64,000 bases of DNA, from NCBI RefSeq assembly GCF_001194135.2, contig NC_068981.1, forward strand, positions 79,494,202-79,558,201. The letters are read 5' to 3'. Under the pieces are notes generated by a model. The model had not been told where the DNA came from, ran no database searches, and saw nothing but the letters and a program-made list of their open reading frames with translations. Shown piece by piece: positions 23,901-61,894 of this stretch. The translations under genes and the position numbers were made by a program. How positions within the stretch are numbered: position 1 is the stretch's first letter; every line of letters begins with the position of its first letter. Source of the stretch: Octopus bimaculoides. Lineage: Eukaryota.

Positions 23901-24491
23901 ACAAGGATTGTATTGCTGAAGGGAACACTGAAGATACAACCTATTTAAAATACTAACAAACTTTTACATTGTGGTGGGAGCTATGTAGGGAACCCTTGAA
24001 AGTTGGATGAAATATTTTATCTAAAAATTATTTTGTCAGTTTACTCATTTTATGCTTTGTGTAAAGAGATTTTATAATACAGTTTAAATGTGATATATAC
24101 ATAACACACACACNNNNNNNNNNTATATATAATGCTTTTATCAATAATATCAAGGATTTGTAAAGCTTTTTGGTACATTCGCATAATTGCTGTCGTTCGT
24201 TAACTCAGTATGGGTAAAAATTTGCTAAGTCATTTTCATGCTTTTGATGTTACTATCAAAACAAAATAATAATAACCGGTCGTTTCTGTAATTAGAAATG
24301 TAGAAATAGATAACTGCTTCAGCAAACGAATGTACATTAATAAAAGAATTTATCTCAATATTTTTTAGGGAATTAGTGAAATGTATGTGTGTGTATCTGA
24401 GATCAGGAATTATCATTCCTAACCGTTCCGATGCATAACTGGTTCTCCTATTGTTGAAAAACAAGGTAACCAAAAAAAAATACTATCTTAC

Positions 24492-24722
24492 CTGTCCTTT
24501 ATTTAATGGCACTCCAATAACCCCGATCTTCTGCAAGTGTATATGTCTTCGGGTGGACACTTGCACTACTTGCCGTGTTGGTCGCAGTAGATTCACACAT
24601 GATCTATTTTGACTGTTTATAACATTTTTGATAACATACGAGAAACTAGAAAACGTCCGTCTGTTAATGAAATTATTCAACAAGTGGTTATATAATGTTC
24701 GTTGACTAAAATGGAAAGACAT
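24492..24722 (-). CDS. ARG: Arginase, first coding exon (77 codons) with putative mitochondrial presequence; remaining exons not found in window
   Basis: ATG at 24722 follows an A-rich leader. The frame ends ...KIGVIGVPLNKGQ at a CAG|GTAAGA phase-0 donor. The motif matches the arginase N-terminal strand (human ARG1 IGIIGAPFSKGQ), and ARG1 also has its first intron right after GQ. Residues 1-65 contain no D/E, 8 R and 2 K. Confidence 0.82.
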
Positions 24723-28990: not shown

Positions 28991-29304
28991 ATATATANNN
29001 NNNNNNNNNNNNNNNNNNNNNNNNNNNNNNNNNNNNNNNNNNNNNNNNNNNNNNNNNNNNNNNNNNNNNNNNNNNNNNNNNNNNNNNNNNNNNNNNNNNN
29101 NNNNNNNNNNNNNNNNNNNNNNNNNNNNNNNNNNNNNNGAGAGAGAGAGAGAGAGAGAGTGTGTGTGTGTGTGTGTGTTTGTGTGTGTGTGTGCGTGTAT
29201 TAATAATAATAATAATAATATAACAACAAAAAATTGAATGAGACCTCGATATTATGTAAAATAGAGGAATTTATCCATAAATATAATATGTGACAATTAG
29301 TTGG

Positions 29305-29379
29305 TTGTCATAATAAAACTCAGAGTTTCGGATACCGGGGCTGAAGTCTGCTCCGGCATCTCATCAGTTATTAAGACAA
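29305..29379 (-). ncRNA. Type I hammerhead ribozyme within a Penelope-like repeat
   Basis: Minus strand reads ttgtc-t-taataa CTGATGA gatgccgg...ccggtatc-c GAAA ctc-t-gagt T ttatta-t-gacaa. Both core motifs are present, stems I, II and III all pair, and the cleavage triplet is GUU. Confidence 0.75.
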
Positions 29380-29459
29380 AACGCGATGAAAATAACCGTT
29401 GAGTAAAGGGAAATTACTCCAATAGGCATGGTGAAAGTAATACTTTGTTCATAGAATCC

Positions 29460-29865
29460 GTATATGCACACATATACACACACATACATGTACGCACGCA
29501 CACACACACACCTGTAAGTATATATATCTATATACATATTCAAACGCGTGTACATATACATAAAATACACATATATACATCTATATGTCTACGCATACAC
29601 GCACATACATACGCATATAAACCCATGCACGCATCACTGCGCTCATATATACATCTCTACACGCACACACACATACATACGCGGATATACAAAACGTAGT
29701 TTATACGCACATGCATATCAATACGCGGAAAACGTATATACAGATAAAAACACATACGCAAAAATGCACGCATCATTATGCTCATATACACATCTCTATA
29801 CGCAAATGCACATACATACGCGGATAGATGTATATACAAATAAAAACACATACGCAAAAAACATA
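29460..29865 (+). repeat. Microsatellite-derived minisatellite with a ~130-bp duplicated unit
   Basis: atgcacgcatca..gctcatata.acatctcta.acgca...catacatacgcggata occurs twice. Confidence 0.75.
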
Positions 29866-30400: not shown

Positions 30401-31284
30401 CTATGGATTGCAGTTATAGCTGATGTAATTATTTACCGAATACAGAAACATATGTAACATGGGAATATCTATTTCATACCCATGCTTTTTTCTCAACTCA
30501 CATACACACGCGCGCGCGCAGTGTGTATGTGTGTATATATATATGTATATATATNNNNNNNNNNNNNNNNNNNNNNNNNNNNNNNNNNNNNNNNNNNNNN
30601 NNNNNNNNNNNNNNNNNNNNNNNNNNNNNNNNNNNNNNNNNNNNNNNNNNNNNNNNNNNNNNNNNNNNNNNNNNNNNNNNNNNNNNNNNNNNNNNNNNNN
30701 NNNNNNNNNNNNNNNNNNNNNNNNNNNNNNNNNNNNNNNNNNNNNNNNNNNNNNNNNNNNNNNNNNNNNNNNNNNNATATATATATATATATAGTGGAGG
30801 CGCAATGGCCCAGTGGTTAGGGCAGCGGACTCGCGGTTTCGATTCCCAGACCGGGCGTTGTGAGTGTTTATTGAGCGAAAACACCTAAAGCTCCACGAGG
30901 CTCCAACACGGGATGGTGGCGAACCCTGCTGTACTCTTTCACCATAACGGAGTGCCATACATGTATGTGTTTATGTATGTTTGCCAAATCAATTGCTGAA
31001 TTTGTTGTAGAAGTCCTCAGACGCCTAGAGTTTTGTGCCAAGACTCTTAAACTACTTGGCACATGCCTCGTCAAAGACACGCACACGTGCGCGTAAGTGG
31101 GCATGTGGGGTAACTAGATCCATGAACTTCACAAAGTACATCTTATTTTGTCTAATCAAGGCATTTATTAACTGAGAGTGCTGTACAAATAATCAGAAAT
31201 TGCTTTGGAGCTCAGGTGAATGTCAACTCCAAATAAACTAGAAAAGCACTCGGAGAGCGCAGACCTCCGCCAAACTAGAAGGAG

Positions 31285-31989: not shown

Positions 31990-32452
31990 CCGAAGTTGAC
32001 TCAGGCCATGTCTAATTTAATAGCACCACTTGGAAGAGATTCACAGTCAGCTCTGGGGAATCGCAGCCCTTTCAAGCAGAGGGCTGTTGTTTTCAGAGAC
32101 ATATCTGGGTGTGGGTGGTTTATCTGGTATTTGTTGTAGGTAATCATCTAGGGATCGTTTGAATGCCGTGAAGTCACTTTCCTCCTTTATGTGTGTCTGG
32201 CACGATGTTGAAGAGAACAGGGCCAACTGAGGTGAAATAGTTCTGCCATAGTCTTGTGATACGACAGGAACATTTCTGTAGTGGACGGATGGCACGGGGG
32301 CCAAGCTTCGGACGAATTTTAAAGATGGGCAATGTTGATGGAATATTTTCCATATCATACAGCTGATATAGAGCTCGCAGCGGCGGTGGAAGGAGCAAAG
32401 CCTGAGCTTTTTGAGTCGATCCCAATAGTCAAGGCTTGTCATGTCATCCTCT
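31990..32452 (-). mobile_element. CR1-type LINE ORF2 3' fragment, frameshifted
   Basis: LDYWDRLKKLRL..., RPKLGPRAIRP, FTSVGPVLFNIVP and FKRSLDDYLQQIPDKPPTP are spread across two overlapping ORFs. Confidence 0.85.
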
Positions 32453-32453
32453 G

Positions 32454-32817
32454 CAGACCTCCGCCAAGCAGCTCATTTTAAGATAGATACGCGAGTAAAA
32501 TTACTAATAGAGAAACGAAAATAAACTTTTGAAACAGCAACGCCACCATAGGTTACGTGCAAACGATGAATATGTTTTCAAGGGAAATAATCAAAGAACG
32601 TAACATTGTAAAGTAAATATAACAAAGGAAAAATCCTTCAAGAATCCATAAAAATTCCCGGATCACTATCATCCGTTCCTTGTGTCATTACCAACTTTTT
32701 CTGCAAGTTTCATCAAATATCGTTCACAACTTTTTGAGTTATTTTTCACACAGACGGACAGACGGACAAACCAACGCCAATGAAAACATAACCTCCTTCC
32801 TTGACGGAGGTAATAAA
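32454..32817 (+). mobile_element. Non-autonomous repeat with (GACG/GACA)n and terminal acctcc...ggaggt hairpin
   Basis: Homologous copies at ~2760-2970, 3425-3790 and 31235-31270. Confidence 0.6.
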
Positions 32818-34149: not shown

Positions 34150-35480
34150 GAGGAGTCTCTTCGCAATCTGAACCGCACGCTTGCATCAACTGCTTCAAAT
34201 CTCACTAATAGCGCCATTTACACAAGGCTATTGTTGACCGGAACAGTTTCATCCTCTAGCCTTCTTTAATTACATTTGGATACAGTCTTTACGAAACTCA
34301 AATGAGATATCTGTGTTCAATTTAGTCTTTGACTTTTTTACATTTTGCATAATGTAATTTTCCCAAAATTCTTTGGCGGACTGATGTTCATCATTGTAGC
34401 TCTAATCAAGTTCATCAATGATAATATAGCTTGAAAACGGAAATAGTTTCCTAATCCCATATGCTGTAGTGACGATCTTATGTTAGGTGGAATGAAAATG
34501 ACTTCAGCATATGCGTGTGGTCGGAGTGAATCGAGATTCGAAGGATGATCTAGAGCGTTGTGCAAATGCAAGAGTGTCTTGGGCTCCAAATTTTCATTCT
34601 CACAATGACGTTTGACGACAATGCAGAAATGTTCAATGAACGATTCAGTAAAGAAATCCTTTGTACCCGAGCTTTTCGGATAAATTTCCATATAACAGTC
34701 AGACTAGATTGCGAAATGTCTTTTATTGCTATAATGTATCCGAGTAATAAACAAGTAATAACTTTAGTCTCCGCTTTTGCTGCTTTATACTCTGATGTCT
34801 TTTCTCACTCCTTTGAGATAAAAGTTTTAGAAGATAAACATATAGGCGCAGGAGTGGCTGTGTGGTAAGTAGCTTGCTTACCAACCACATGGTCCCGAGT
34901 TCAGTCCCACTGCGTGGCACCTTGGGCAAGTGTCTTCTACTATAGCCTTGGGCCGACCAAAGCCTTGTGAGTAGATTTGGTAGACGAAAACTGAAAGAAG
35001 ACCGTCGTGTATATGTATATGTATGTAAATATGTGTGTGTGTTTGTGTGTCTGTGTTTATCCCCCCTCTAACATCGCTTGACAACCGATGCTGGTGTGTT
35101 TACGTCCCCGTAACTTAGCGGTTCGGCAAAAGCGACCAATAGAATAAGTACTAGGCTTACAAAGAATAACTCCTGGGATCGATTTGCTCGACTAAAGGCG
35201 GTGCTCCAGCATGGCCGTAGTCAAATGACTGAAACGAGTAAAAGAGTAAAAGAATAAAAGAGTATATCCAAATCGACTCGCATTCGGTTACATTAAAAAC
35301 AAGATTGCTAGTTAATTAATTCGTTCTATAGTCTTCAGTTATGCTGGAAATTCAGCTACAGTATGGACATCAGCATTTAGTGATTTAACTTTTCAACTCA
35401 ACCACGAAATGCAACAACCATTTTAATGGTTCTCTTAGCTTCTTGTTTCAACCGATTAAATAAATTCAGTGTGATACCAC
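34150..35480 (-). mobile_element. pogo/Tigger transposase remnant (DDE_1) interrupted by a SINE at 34845-35263
   Basis: Peptides ADVHTVAEFPA and VFNV(T)E on one side of the SINE. On the other side: TFISKE..YKAAK, FIEHFCIVVKRHCENENLEPKTLLHLHNA and EVIFIPPNIRSSLQHM. Confidence 0.85.
34845..35263 (+). mobile_element. SINE family A, full length
   Basis: Same family. Further partial copies at ~4855-5220, 6690-6870(-), 7390-7550(-), 9690-9840(-), 15935-16085(-), 26440-26600, 33830-33975 and 54400-54530. Confidence 0.85.
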
Positions 35481-56501: not shown

Positions 56502-56910
56502 CACGAGATCTGATCAATAAGTATCCGGACTGTTGCCATAGAAACGAAGCTAAAGCACGCACAGTAAAACCACTTGAACTCTGCTGTGCATGCGCACTAA
56601 GTTTTAACGTTCTAGTTCACTTCTGCTTTTTACGGTAGTGCTTGGAAGGAACGTGTGTAGCGTATGATCGTCGCATTGACCATGGCAGAGATAGTTGTCA
56701 TGGCGATACCTGCTCAAAGGACTACTTAAAGTTGCAGAAAGTGTATGAGCCATACGCAAGTGTATGAGTAGGTCAGACGTTTCCAAGATGGCCGAAAAAA
56801 TGTCGATATTGATGAACGTTCTGGGAGACCCGCAACCAGCAGAACTGAGAAAAACATTGCAGATGTGCATGCAGCTGTGAGGGGAAATCGTAGTATCACC
56901 AAGAGAAGAG
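56502..56910 (+). mobile_element. 5' fragment of a mariner element
   Basis: TIR-like cacgagatctgatcaataagtatccggac, then RRFQDGRKNVDIDERSGRPATSRTEKNIADV (mariner HTH / SGRP linker). Confidence 0.8.
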
Positions 56911-59444
56911 AAGAAATCAGTTTTGCAATAAAATTTATATTCAACTAGTTTCGAATAACATCGAAATTGGATAAATTTCTTGTAGATTTTTCTCTTCGAT
57001 GATAACCTTTTAATGCTCATATGATACTTTGGTCACTCGGTTGAATTAACGACTGAGTGTTTTAAGGCAAGAAATTTCCTTTGTCGTTCCATCAAGAAAA
57101 ATCCTTTCTGTGTACCGTATAAATTGTCAACTCAGAAAGCAATTTTTCGTTTTTATTCAACAACTAAAAATAACTGTAGCCATCTATGCATTTACATTAG
57201 AACAGTATTGTTCAAGTAAGCTTTTGATACCTTTAAAACACCAAAAAGTTTTTACTTTCTACAATCACGAGAAACTTCTATTTTTGTCCGTTCATGTTTG
57301 CTCCGCAAAGAAATGGCACTCGCTATTTTGAAGATTTCAATCCTTTCGCATTTTCATTTTTAAACAAATAAATATACCAAAACGAGGTTCCTCCGAATTT
57401 TCACATGAGTAACCTCACTTGATATGGTACGCACCTCAGATCAGAGATCAGGTAATCGTTCCAGGTCGAGCTAATACCCCACTTTAAAAGGTCACAGCTC
57501 CGGTTCTACGGGCCTGATAGTTAACATTAAAAAAAAAAAAAAACCTGAAGTCATCTGTTGATGACACACTGCACCACCCTCTGTTCGTCTGTTTTGTCAG
57601 TACAACTTTAATAACTAACCATTCATTCCAAATTCAGATACCAGTATCATTTCCAGTGAATGTACACAGGGTGAGGAAATTCTAAACCGCTTCAGACAGG
57701 CTTCTGCATTTTTTAGAAACCTCAGGTTTTAGAAGTCTTTGGAAATAATCATGCAATCATCCATACCAAATGCTTTGTCTTATTGGTATTCTGTGATTCA
57801 AAGAAGACCACTTTGAAGAGAGGCAACTCTCCAATGTGAAAATAGCCTACTGCCATTCACTCTGGTGGTCTTACTATTTATTAGAGAGTGATTGAAGCTA
57901 TGGAGGAGAAATTCACTCATCACAAACAAAAGCAAGAAAAAGACATGTATACATTCAGATTTATACCTAATATCTCTAATCAAACACTCACATATCCTCT
58001 CTGCGATCGATACTATATCTCGAGGATTGTGACGTACGGTTTTCATTGGCCAAAAACTGAAGGAGAAAACGCCTAACATCAGACTCCATAAACAACCGTA
58101 AGCAAGTTTGTGTTATGTGAATATGTAAATATTCGAAATAGGAAAAGCCAATATTGATGCTGATAAATAAAATTTAAAATAACTTTGGTGAAATTACCTT
58201 TCAACAGCCTTAACCTGTTATACTTCTTTCCTGTGTTGACACAAACTAAATGAATGATTTACAATAATATCTATATTAAACATTGACTCTGTCTTCTTTC
58301 TAAATTATTTCAAAAACGATGCTTACAATACTGCTATGACATATCTGCAGTAAAAATTTATTTAATGTATGCTTAAAGCATCACAGTACAGAGTAAATGA
58401 GATGCCCATGTTCTTTGGGAAAGATTTTTTAACGCAAAATCTATCTAAAAATAAACAGGCAAACAAAAGCATTTTTATAACTTATGACTGATGTCTTACT
58501 CTAGCAAAATTATTAAGCTATTCTGGGTGACAGTCATTAGAAGGACAAACAACCAGCGGGAGATAATTGATCCACTGCTTATTACTGGCATTGCATTGTA
58601 TTCGAACTCTCAAATTACACAGACCGCCTAGTCGGAACGCGTCAGTGTTGAGTCAATTTGCTGTTGCAAGTAAGAACAGCATAAAATTGACAGCTTCCAG
58701 TGTTGAGTTAAAATACTTCAGTGTGTGTATGTAAACTATTCTCGTACTCGCTTTCAATATAGTCTTCTGGTCGTCTTGTCTCATTTTGACATTGTAAGTG
58801 ATCTCTGTTTCTGATTACAAAGTGTTTGTAATAGCTGCGGTGCATTCTGTTTTAAATTCATTACTAATAGACCCCGATTACATGCGGCATTTTCTTCAGT
58901 CGCGAACGATTCCTACTGCATAACTGCTATACTTCCGTTTCATCTATAAGAGTTGATACGTTTCCTAAAAGACACAATAATACAGAGAATGGAAGATGTC
59001 CGCTTCAACTTACAAGCAAAACCGGTCTACAAAATTGACTTGCTATGAGCATATCTCTCACCCTAGAATGTTCCCTCCGCCAGAGAAGTATTCTAAGCCA
59101 CAAAGTCACTAATGTATTTAACGAGAGTCCATATTGTTATTTAAGCCATCAGTAATGTCGTAGAGTGTCTCAGAGTTCTAAGGGACCGATGCTTGTTAGT
59201 GTATGCTGTAGCTTTTTATCAATAAATACAGTTCCAGTGTATAGATTTGCCTCGGGGTCTGTAAAGCTGTTAAGATGAACAATACCAGGAAAATATTTAT
59301 ATATCATCAATAGAATTTTGAAGTCATTCAAGTAAGAATCGAAATCGGTTCATAGAGTTTACCGCTTAATCAACAATTTTTCCTACTCTTTGTTCAATAT
59401 TTATTTTTAAAAATATATCAAAATTCTATTGACTATATATAAAT

Positions 59445-60649: not shown

Positions 60650-61894
60650 GATGGATGGATAGGCTGAAAAGTTCAGAGGATAACTATGAAGGAGTAATGA
60701 TAGAGTTGTGAAATCTTGCATGCATTAATTTCGACCCTTCTTATTAATAATTGCATCGTTTCTTTCAAGGTGAACTGGCATCTGACTGTTCAAAAAAGAC
60801 TTCAAAAGTAACTAGTGGCGACTTCTCTTGAAAATGGACAAAATTTAGCATCGTAGTGTTATCAAGTACCTATAGAAAAAGAGTTAGCCCCCAAGGACAT
60901 TCATGCTGATATAGTTGCTACATTAGGGGGGGTGCTCCAGCTTTACCAACAAAACAAATGTGAGCAGCTGGATTTAGGAAGAGAAGCGAAATTCTTGAAG
61001 ATGACCTAAAGTCTAGACGTCCTGCAACTGCTACCATCGAGGAAAACATTGATCGTATTCACCCTGACAGCCGATTGGTAATAAATCAAATAGCCAATGC
61101 TATTAACATATACCGTAAGAGACTTGAGAAGATTCTGCACAAAGGATTAATGGATTTGCATGATGAAGGTTTCTGCCACGTCTTTTGACACCTGATGAAA
61201 AATTACCAGGCTGATCATTTCACGGGGAAATCTGAAATTGTTTGAGTCAGATCCAACCGGTTTCCTTTAATGTTTCCAAACCCAGGAGAGGTGTTGGCTT
61301 TATCACTTTGAGCCAGAGACAAAAACACAATCCATGCAAGTGGAAACACTCCTCCTTACCTGCACCAAAGAAGGCCAAGGTCGTTTCACTTTCAGGGAAG
61401 GTAGTTGCCTCAGTTTTTTAGTGGGGATGCAAAAGGCATGATGTTTATTGACTATCTTCAAAAGGGCCACACTATCAATGGAAAGTACTATGCCAAATTA
61501 CTGAGGCAGTTATAAAAGGCTATCAAGACCAGACGCTTAAGAAAACTGACGAAAGTGGTTTTGTTTCATCAGGACAATGCTCCAGTACATAAGCCCTTCG
61601 TTTCTGTGGCTGCTGTGCGTGACTGTGATTTTAAACTGGTTGATCACCCTCACAATTCTCTTGATTTTCACCAATTTCACAGTAACGATGATGTCATATT
61701 CGCTGTTGGTGATTTTTCCGACCAAGAGGATGACAGCGTCTTCACCAACGGGATCCAAGCACTGCAACAACTATGGAAGAAGTGTGTGAACTGCAAAGGG
61801 AGACTACGTTGAAAAATAAACCTCATTTGGACACATTCCATCAAAGTATCTTGGTCAGTTTGTCAGCCTATGAACTTTTCAACCGACCCTCGTA
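60650..61894 (+). mobile_element. Near full-length degenerate mariner transposon (pseudogenised transposase)
   Basis: Ends match (aggctgaaaagttca / tgaacttttcaaccgaccctcgTA). Peptides MDKI*HRSVIKYL, YHFEPETK, LFHQDNAPVHK and GIQALQQLWKKCVNCKGDYVEK*, with many stops. Confidence 0.9.

What the first reader, a model, noticed from the sequence alone, without database searches (positions are those of the whole stretch)
29305..29379. Complete hammerhead ribozyme fold hidden on the minus strand upstream of arginase
Seen: the minus strand carries CUGAUGA and GAAA cores. Stem I is 6 bp (taataa/ttatta) plus a U:U mismatch plus 5 bp (ttgtc/gacaa). Stem II is gatgccgg/ccggtatc with one bulged C. Stem III is ACUC/GAGU closed by a single U. 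The cleavage triplet is GUU, giving a predicted cut between 29317 and 29316. Known: type I hammerheads with very short or palindromic stem III occur in Penelope-like retroelements and often cleave as dimers. Inference: this is a self-cleaving RNA in a dispersed cephalopod repeat (about 29220-29450), co-oriented with arginase and ~4.6 kb upstream of its ATG. It could cut upstream read-through transcripts or mark a retrozyme-like family.
Basis: partly seen in the sequence, partly recalled or inferred. Interest (0 to 1): 0.85.

Follow-up and report, generated by a model that had tools for sequence, protein, structure and literature searches.

The report
Solo hammerhead ribozyme motif in octopus-like DNA
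The minus strand at 29305-29379 really does carry a complete hammerhead self-cleaving RNA motif that chance is very unlikely to produce, but it is a single, probably transposon-derived copy of a kind already known to litter animal genomes, and nothing links it to arginase regulation.

Summary
Window 29305-29379 (minus strand) has every invariant hammerhead nucleotide: CUGAUGA, GAA, the A15.1-U16.1 pair and H17=U. It also has three helices. Helix I is 6 bp + U.U + 5 bp. Helix II is 8 bp with an extra C. Helix III is the palindrome ACUCUGAGU. The predicted cut lies between 29317 and 29316.

It is the only such motif in the 64 kb. Nothing comparable appeared in 20 Mb of random sequence. None of 539 decoy cores scanned on the real window came close.

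It matches neither described animal class. Rfam hammerhead models do not score it, but they also miss 14 HHR motifs beside Penelope-like element (PLE) ORFs that I fetched as controls. A covariance model built from those PLE hammerheads does not score it either.

The window holds no PLE coding remnant, no second copy and no tandem partner. No related copy turned up in any collection I could search, so "dispersed repeat" is untested. The arginase link rests on a 14-residue exon-1 match plus a splice donor.

Best reading: a solo, mobile-element-derived type I hammerhead with a marginal helix III that favours dimer cleavage, probably idle at this locus. This is a new member of a known kind, of modest interest.

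The parts
29368..29379 (-). Helix I, 5' strand: UUGUC (29375-29379), an unpaired U (29374), then UAAUAA (29368-29373).
   Evidence: Ensemble pairing probabilities are 0.64-0.999 for all but the outermost pair and the pair next to the core.
29361..29367 (-). Catalytic core, 5' box: C3 U4 G5 A6 U7 G8 A9 (CUGAUGA).
29331..29360 (-). Helix II: GAUGCCGG paired with CCGGUAUC (8 bp, one G.U), closed by the 14-nt loop AGCAGACUUCAGCC (29339-29352). The loop can add 2 more bp.
   Evidence: Pairing probabilities are >= 0.99.
29330..29330 (-). Extra C on the 3' side of helix II. Either C of the CC pair (29331/29330) can pair with G10.1. The extra base is therefore a migrating bulge or an insertion next to G12.
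   Evidence: RNAfold pairs G10.1 with C29331. The canonical core geometry needs C29330 instead.
29327..29329 (-). Catalytic core, 3' box: G12 A13 A14.
29318..29326 (-). Helix III, the self-complementary 9-mer ACUCUGAGU (A15.1 to U16.1). As a hairpin it gives only 3 bp plus a 3-nt loop. As a duplex of two copies it gives 4 bp + U.U + 4 bp.
   Evidence: hairpin pairing probability is about 0.08; the isolated duplex is -7.9 kcal/mol, and the cofold dimer is -52.5 against 2 x -20.2 for two monomers; this is the only copy of the 9-mer in the window.
29316..29317 (-). Predicted cleavage site: 3' of H17 (U 29317) and 5' of N1.1 (U 29316). The triplet is GUU.
   Evidence: Hammerhead numbering applied. 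H17 = U also occurs in the control PLE hammerheads of L009, L011 and L014.
29305..29316 (-). Helix I, 3' strand: UUAUUA (29311-29316), an unpaired U (29310), then GACAA (29305-29309).
29226..29460 (-). A 235-bp single-copy segment (GC 0.35) that carries the motif. It is bounded by (GA)n(GT)n(TAA)n at 29139-29220 and by TG/TA-rich simple sequence from about 29462. It sits on a 1.4-kb contig piece between N gaps 28998-29138 and 30555-30776.

Best explanation
This is a genuine hammerhead-type (type I) self-cleaving RNA motif. Most likely it arrived with a small non-autonomous retroelement of the Penelope/retrozyme lineage, or with a 5'-truncated element end. It sits as a single copy between microsatellites.

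How it would work, if the minus strand is transcribed:
1. Helices I and II form readily.
2. The core then positions the 2'-OH of U29317 for in-line attack.
3. Cleavage leaves a 2',3'-cyclic phosphate on U29317 and a 5'-OH on U29316.

Helix III is marginal as a hairpin and perfectly self-complementary. Efficient cleavage is therefore expected mainly in a double hammerhead made from two copies. This solo copy has no partner in cis. It is probably weakly active or idle here, with no host function.

Shown: the motif, its improbability by chance, its solitary state, and the dimer thermodynamics. Inferred: the mobile-element origin, dimer dependence and inactivity.
For: - Core and helices are complete.
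- The motif is unique in the window. It is absent from 20 Mb of random sequence at comparable stringency and from 539 decoy-core scans of the real window.
- G10.1-C11.1 and C15.2-G16.2 are present although the descriptor did not require them.
- With the core held unpaired, the hammerhead fold is -20.2 kcal/mol against an unconstrained MFE of -23.1.
- The cofold dimer forms the double hammerhead with an intermolecular helix III, about 12 kcal/mol better than two monomers.
- The same descriptor recovers 11 HHR motifs next to RT-EN ORFs in fetched PLE loci, so it works on real elements. H17 = U occurs among them.
- Microsatellite flanks fit the reported PLE insertion bias (PMC8557442).
- Dispersed single retrozyme units are documented (bioRxiv 10.64898/2026.07.22.740005).
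- Penelope families are annotated in Octopus vulgaris (PMC13282606). 235 Rfam hammerhead loci were reported in the giant squid (PMC6962438).
Against: - There is only one copy. No relative was found anywhere, so there is no covariation and no evidence that it belongs to a repeat family.
- Rfam hammerhead models give no hit even at E <= 10 on 96 nt.
- The CM built from PLE hammerheads gives no hit.
- The extra nucleotide is on the 3' side of helix II, not between A9 and G10.1 as in every PLE control.
- Loop 2 is 14 nt against 3-4 nt in the controls.
- No PLE coding remnant is in the window.
- In the 235-nt context the MFE fold uses competing hairpins instead of helix I, and UCAUC pairs with the GAUGA of the core.
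- Activity is untested.
Confidence: 0.62

Rival explanations
1. An active tandem or clustered element. The copy belongs to a live retrozyme or PLE array, and its partner copies are hidden in the assembly gaps. In vivo it would cleave as a cis dimer and yield small linear or circular RNAs.
For: N gaps lie 167 nt downstream (28998-29138) and about 1.2 kb upstream (30555-30776) of the motif. PLE and retrozyme arrays are known to break short-read assemblies (PMC8557442). The motif is fully intact, which fits a young copy.
Against: Retrozyme units abut head to tail. Here both immediate flanks are microsatellites, not a second unit. No other copy of the 9-mer ACUCUGAGU or of the 235-bp segment is in the window.
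Confidence: 0.13
2. A chance look-alike. AT-rich non-coding DNA happens to spell the core boxes next to hairpins, and the sequence has never been a ribozyme.
For: It is a singleton. Descriptor hits that cannot be grouped into families are normally discarded (PMC4209133). No covariance model recognises it. It fits neither described animal architecture.
Against: The expected count at this quality is about 1e-5 per 64-kb window. That figure is my extrapolation from the Markov simulation, the decoy-core control and a rough calculation from base frequencies. On my rough estimate it is well below one per genome once the helix I extension, G10.1-C11.1 and C15.2-G16.2 are counted. The Rfam negative carries little weight, because Rfam also misses all 14 PLE-associated control hammerheads.
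Confidence: 0.17
3. An exapted host ribozyme. The motif is kept by selection upstream of the arginase-like gene to cut read-through or upstream transcripts.
For: It is co-oriented with an arginase-like exon 1 and lies 4,595 nt upstream of it. The motif is intact.
Against: There is no evidence of transcription or of conservation at the orthologous locus. The arginase identification is itself weak: a 14-residue match at E = 0.28, no database protein shares the exon, and there is no Pfam hit. Helix III is too weak for efficient monomer cleavage. The neighbourhood is otherwise SINE-rich repeat sequence.
Confidence: 0.05

Closest known systems
Penelope-like-element hammerheads: the min-HHRs and their variants with a small palindromic helix III (Cervera & de la Pena 2014, PMC4209133).
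   Same: - Type I topology.
- A long helix II (8 bp here, 6-8 bp there).
- G10.1-C11.1.
- A palindromic helix III that points to dimer cleavage.
- An extra unpaired nucleotide at helix II.
- H17 can be U.
- Mostly solo copies scattered in animal genomes, with a liking for microsatellites.
   Different: - The extra nucleotide is on the 3' side (next to G12), not between A9 and G10.1.
- Loop 2 is 14 nt against 3-4 nt.
- Helix III is a 9-nt palindrome against 0-4 nt.
- Helix I is 6+5 bp against 3-6 bp.
- It is not next to any RT-EN ORF.
- A CM built from six PLE hammerheads fetched here does not score it.
Canonical metazoan type I hammerheads of non-LTR retrozymes and satellite DNA in newt, Schistosoma, coral and mussel (Rfam RF00163; PMC7229834).
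   Same: - Type I topology.
- A 6-bp helix I up to an interruption.
- A weak helix III with a palindromic cap. In amphibians this makes cleavage depend on dimers.
- A low-GC host segment of a few hundred bp.
   Different: - Helix II is 8 bp, not 4 bp, so the usual loop 1-loop 2 contact cannot be assumed.
- There is no tandem array.
- There is no Rfam hit at any threshold.
SINE-like hammerhead elements of schistosomes (Sm-alpha / Sj-alpha).
   Same: A single hammerhead inside a short, non-coding, dispersed element.
   Different: No Pol III-type element structure was identified here and no copies are available for comparison. This parallel comes from the literature only (PMC6765202).

Membership tests
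Hammerhead ribozyme (general definition) | Invariant core: C3 U4 G5 A6 N7 G8 A9, G12 A13 A14, the A15.1-U16.1 pair, and H17 not G. | tested here: met
   CUGAUGA at 29361-29367, GAA at 29327-29329, A29326-U29318, and U29317.
Hammerhead ribozyme (general definition) | Three helices radiating from the core, with G10.1-C11.1 closing helix II. | tested here: met
   Helix I is 6 (+5) bp, helix II 8 bp, and helix III 3 bp as a hairpin or 4+4 bp as a dimer. The G-C pair is available through either C of the CC at 29331/29330.
Hammerhead ribozyme (general definition) | Site-specific, Mg2+-dependent self-cleavage 3' of H17. | not testable with these tools
   This needs in vitro transcription, or mapping of RNA ends at 29317/29316.
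Rfam hammerhead clan (Hammerhead_1 RF00163 and relatives) | A covariance-model score at or above the gathering threshold. | tested here: not met
   No hammerhead hit at gathering on the whole window. None at E <= 10 on 501 nt or on 96 nt. Control: Rfam also reports none of the 14 PLE-associated HHR motifs in L008-L014, so this failure carries little weight.
PLE min-HHR (Cervera & de la Pena 2014) | An unpaired nucleotide between A9 and G10.1. | tested here: not met
   G10.1 follows A9 directly, and the extra C is on the 3' side at 29330. All 11 control PLE hammerheads found by the descriptor have the 5' extra nucleotide.
PLE min-HHR (Cervera & de la Pena 2014) | A long helix II (6-8 bp) and a very short palindromic helix III. 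| tested here: inconclusive
   The 8-bp helix II fits. Helix III is palindromic but 9 nt long, against the 4-nt palindrome in all the controls. Loop 2 is 14 nt against 3-4 nt.
PLE min-HHR (Cervera & de la Pena 2014) | A position in the pseudo-LTR beside an RT/GIY-YIG ORF, or sequence homology to such a pLTR. | tested here: not met
   No Pfam domain in ORFs of 27.8-35 kb. No PLE motif by regex. tblastn of 120 PLE proteins against the window gave nothing below E = 0.08. Homology to an octopus pLTR could not be tested.
PLE min-HHR (Cervera & de la Pena 2014) | A match to a covariance model built from PLE-associated hammerheads. | tested here: not met
   Model R1 re-finds its training set at 41-61 bits and finds 3 new copies in L014 at 24.7 bits. 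In the window it finds nothing, and with filters off it gives only a 5.6-bit fragment.
Non-LTR retrozyme (Cervera & de la Pena 2020) | Head-to-tail tandem units of about 150-450 bp, each with a type I hammerhead. | tested here: not met
   There is a single motif. Both flanks are microsatellites, and the window holds no second copy of the 235-bp segment. Assembly gaps nearby prevent complete exclusion.
Non-LTR retrozyme (Cervera & de la Pena 2020) | Low GC content (< 45-50 %) and expression as small linear or circular RNA. | tested here: inconclusive
   GC is 0.35 for 29226-29460, which fits. Expression cannot be tested here.

The most novel reading that the evidence does not exclude
The motif may be the first sighted copy of an undescribed cephalopod hammerhead class. 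Its marks would be an 8-10 bp helix II with a large loop, an extra nucleotide next to G12 instead of next to A9, a 9-nt palindromic helix III and a long interrupted helix I. Such a class would be carried by its own family of small non-autonomous retroelements. Both Rfam and PLE-type models miss it, so genome annotations would overlook it.
Probability: 0.15. Interest if true: 0.45.

Novelty: new member of a known kind. Interest (0 to 1): 0.3.

Why it matters
Hammerheads are already known by the thousand in animal genomes, mostly tied to Penelope-like elements and retrozymes. One more copy changes little.

Two points have modest value:
- This copy has a full core but an architecture that both the curated Rfam models and a PLE-derived model miss. 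Rfam also missed all 14 PLE-associated control hammerheads. Annotation by covariance model alone therefore undercounts these ribozymes.
- If the source genome turns out to hold a family of such motifs, cephalopods would gain a distinct retrozyme-like lineage to study for circular RNA production.

There is no support for a role in arginase expression.

Tried and rejected
Searches for related copies, all empty:
- Self-BLAST of 29000-29700 against the window gave only microsatellite hits.
- Exact-product look-ups of four window ORFs found nothing.
- A six-frame pseudo-protein of the 235-bp segment against 5.8 billion proteins found nothing.
- A 38-aa pseudo-ORF across the motif against 1.84 billion representatives found nothing.
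- Pattern scans of metagenome contigs gave 0 hits, then 4 hits in bacterial contigs whose flanks show no hammerhead helices; by eye they are GC-rich proline-rich coding repeats.
- The scan of bacterial and archaeal genomes gave 3 hits. The one I inspected (L001) is a chance match without stems.
- The scan of viral contigs gave 0 hits.
- Literature full-text search for the sequence strings found only unrelated primers.

Routes to the orthologous locus:
- The exon-1 peptide shares no words with any database protein.
- tblastn with human ARG1, written from memory, finds only the 14-residue exon-1 match.

Other dead ends:
- The Rfam microRNA 'hits' at 29440-29600 and the miR166-like match inside helix II/loop 2 are low-complexity or chance matches far below gathering.
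- TE remnants I thought I recognised by eye have no Pfam support at E <= 1. These were mariner-like at about 56.8 and 61-61.8 kb, pogo-like at 34341-34703, and a LINE RT tail at 32050-32472.
- Lunse et al. 2017 on PLE hammerhead dimers is not held in the library.
- No cephalopod PLE locus could be singled out among the 6,282 PLE protein hits. Whether octopus PLE hammerheads look like this one therefore remains open.

Full report
**What is there**

The minus strand of 29305-29379 reads:

UUGUC-U-UAAUAA / CUGAUGA / GAUGCCGG-(14 nt)-CCGGUAUC-C / GAA / ACUCUGAGU / U / UUAUUA-U-GACAA.

In hammerhead numbering the parts are:
- Helix I: 6 bp, a U.U mismatch, then 5 more bp.
- Core: C3-A9.
- Helix II: 8 bp with one G.U, plus one extra C.
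- G12-A14.
- Helix III: from A15.1 to U16.1.
- H17 = U at 29317 and N1.1 = U at 29316.

The topology is type I, because helix I is the open one. The one correction concerns helix III. A 4-bp stem closed by a single U cannot exist as a hairpin. Helix III is either 3 bp with a 3-nt loop or an intermolecular duplex.

**Is it more than chance?**

- A descriptor I wrote finds this site and nothing else on either strand of the 64 kb.
- In 20 Mb of first-order Markov sequence with the window's composition, stems of at least (6,4,4) occurred once and (6,6,4) never. The observed motif is (6,8,4).
- To allow for the hairpin content of real DNA, I rescanned the real window with 539 decoy cores of identical composition. 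Eight reached (4,4,3), one reached (5,5,3) and none reached (6,6,3).
- Extrapolation from those counts, together with a rough calculation from base frequencies, puts the expectation near 1e-5 per window. It is below one per genome of a few Gb on my rough estimate. This is before counting the helix I extension and the G10.1-C11.1 and C15.2-G16.2 pairs, which the descriptor did not require.

A chance origin is therefore unlikely, though not excluded for a singleton.

**Folding**

- The unconstrained MFE (-23.1 kcal/mol, z = -3.96) pairs part of the core.
- With the core held single-stranded, the hammerhead secondary structure is the optimum at -20.2 kcal/mol.
- Helices I and II are robust, with pair probabilities mostly above 0.9.
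- Helix III as a hairpin is not robust, at about 0.08.
- RNAfold pairs G10.1 with C29331 and leaves C29330 next to G12. Because the two bases are CC, the bulge can migrate and restore the canonical G10.1-C11.1/G12 stack.
- Two copies cofold into a double hammerhead with an intermolecular helix III of 4 bp + U.U + 4 bp. Its energy is -52.5 kcal/mol against -40.4 for two monomers.
- In the 235-nt context competing hairpins appear: GACAA/UUGUC downstream, and UCAUC against the GAUGA of the core.

**Comparison with known classes**

- Rfam gives no hammerhead hit. This holds at gathering on the whole window and at E <= 10 on 501 nt or 96 nt.
- To judge what that means, I fetched real Penelope-like-element loci.
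  - A synthetic RT-EN consensus written from memory hit 6,282 PLE proteins.
  - Seven of those proteins led to loci L008-L014.
- My descriptor finds 11 hammerheads in five of these loci. They lie 31-312 nt downstream of the ORF in the four loci with 3' flank, or upstream of it (inverted in four loci, direct in L009 and L011).
- All 11 share one architecture:
  - helix I of 3-6 bp;
  - one extra nucleotide between A9 and G10.1;
  - helix II of 6-7 bp;
  - loop 2 of 3-4 nt;
  - a 4-nt palindromic helix III (ACGU or AUAU);
  - H17 = C or U.
- This matches the published description (PMC4209133).
- Rfam detects none of them, so its silence on the window motif says little.
- A covariance model built from six of them (A1, R1) re-finds them at 41-61 bits. 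It also discovers three further copies in L014 at 24.7 bits. It does not score the window motif, even with filters off.

The window motif is thus a hammerhead by definition. It sits between the two described animal architectures. It has the long helix II and palindromic helix III of PLE types. It has the 6-bp helix I and lacks the 5' extra nucleotide, like canonical types. On top of that it has a 14-nt loop 2 and a 3' extra C of its own.

**Context**

- The motif lies in a 235-bp single-copy, low-GC (0.35) segment at 29226-29460.
- That segment lies between (GA)n(GT)n(TAA)n and TG/TA-rich simple sequence, on a 1.4-kb contig piece bounded by N gaps.
- There is no second copy of the segment or of the helix III 9-mer in the window.
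- There is no PLE coding remnant. Pfam finds nothing on the local ORFs. A motif regex finds nothing. tblastn of 120 PLE proteins finds nothing.
- Insertion into microsatellites and scattered solo copies are typical of PLEs and of retrozyme monomers (PMC8557442; bioRxiv 10.64898/2026.07.22.740005).
- The window looks octopod. A SINE core that I recalled from memory as the octopus SINE occurs 16 times in it.
- Octopus genomes carry Penelope families (PMC13282606). The giant squid genome was reported to hold 235 Rfam hammerhead loci (PMC6962438).

**The arginase claim**

- ORF 24483-24722 on the minus strand ends in IGVIGVPLNKGQ, followed by a CAG|GTAAGA donor.
- This resembles the N-terminus of arginases, with 9 of 14 residues identical to human ARG1 written from memory (E = 0.28).
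- No other arginase exon is in the window.
- No database protein shares the exon.
- Pfam is silent.
Nothing points to a functional link.

**What could not be done**

No cephalopod genome was reachable. Every route to other copies came back empty. Family membership, covariation, copy number and orthologous conservation therefore remain open, and so does activity.

**Verdict**

It is not shown to be a dispersed repeat, a PLE-type member or an arginase-related element.

The most likely reading (about 0.6) is a solo, mobile-element-derived hammerhead that is weakly active or idle at this locus.

Rivals:
- a chance look-alike (about 0.17);
- a copy of a live array hidden by assembly gaps (about 0.13);
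- an exapted host ribozyme (about 0.05).

This is a new member of a known kind. Interest is 0.3.

Noticed in passing
window 765, 2602, 16678, 16852, 17135, 20037, 38150, 42099, 50336, 51462, 51573, 51784, 52662, 52877, 53097, 63381: Sixteen matches (up to 3 mismatches, 0 expected by chance) to TTTCATCCTTTCGGGGTCGA. I recalled this from memory as the core of the abundant octopus tRNA-derived SINE. It supports an octopod origin of the window and shows how repeat-dense the window is.
   Followed up: partly
window 24483-24722 (-): An arginase-like first exon. It has a 60-residue basic, serine-rich leader that looks like a mitochondrial presequence, then IGVIGVPLNKGQ and a CAG|GTAAGA splice donor. 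No further arginase exon is in the remaining 24 kb downstream.
   Followed up: partly
L008-L011, L013, L014 (fetched PLE loci): In L008, L010, L011 and L013 the HHR motifs come in pairs, one direct copy just after the RT-EN ORF and one inverted copy upstream, as expected for an inverted 5'-truncated partner. L009 has a single copy upstream and L014 has three. Their architecture is uniform across loci from different assemblies (two are Amphiura and Branchiostoma, the rest unidentified). H17 is U in L009, L011 and L014.
   Followed up: yes
L008-L014: Rfam release 15 reports none of the 14 PLE-associated HHR motifs in these loci, even at E <= 1. A six-sequence home-made CM finds all of them, including three in L014 that my descriptor missed. 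Rfam-based annotation therefore misses this class.
   Followed up: yes
window 29607-29687 and 29752-29826: An 81-nt direct repeat at 83 % identity, spaced about 145 nt apart, inside the TG/TA-rich stretch upstream of the motif on the minus strand. It may be a short satellite-like duplication.
   Followed up: no
window 29440-29600: Several Rfam microRNA models (mir-3149, mir-297, mir-466 and others) give sub-threshold matches. All lie on (TG)n/(TA)n hairpins and are composition artefacts.
   Followed up: yes
window 29331-29390 (-): Helix II and loop 2 (GCCGGAGCAGACUUCAGCCCCGG) resemble the plant miR166 mature sequence closely enough to give a 15.5-bit partial MIR166 match. I take this as coincidence.
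   Followed up: no
window 32050-32472 (-), 34341-34703 (-), 56772-56945 (+), 60964-61809 (+): Open frames that look by eye like the C-terminal tail of a LINE reverse transcriptase, a pogo-type DDE transposase and mariner-type transposase fragments. Pfam gives no hit at E <= 1, so these remain impressions only.
   Followed up: partly
window 29297-29314 (-): Just past helix I, GACAA-CCAACUAA-UUGUC can form its own hairpin. It reuses the GACAA that otherwise extends helix I. In the 235-nt fold this hairpin, together with a UCAUC/GAUGA pairing to the core, replaces the hammerhead fold.
   Followed up: partly
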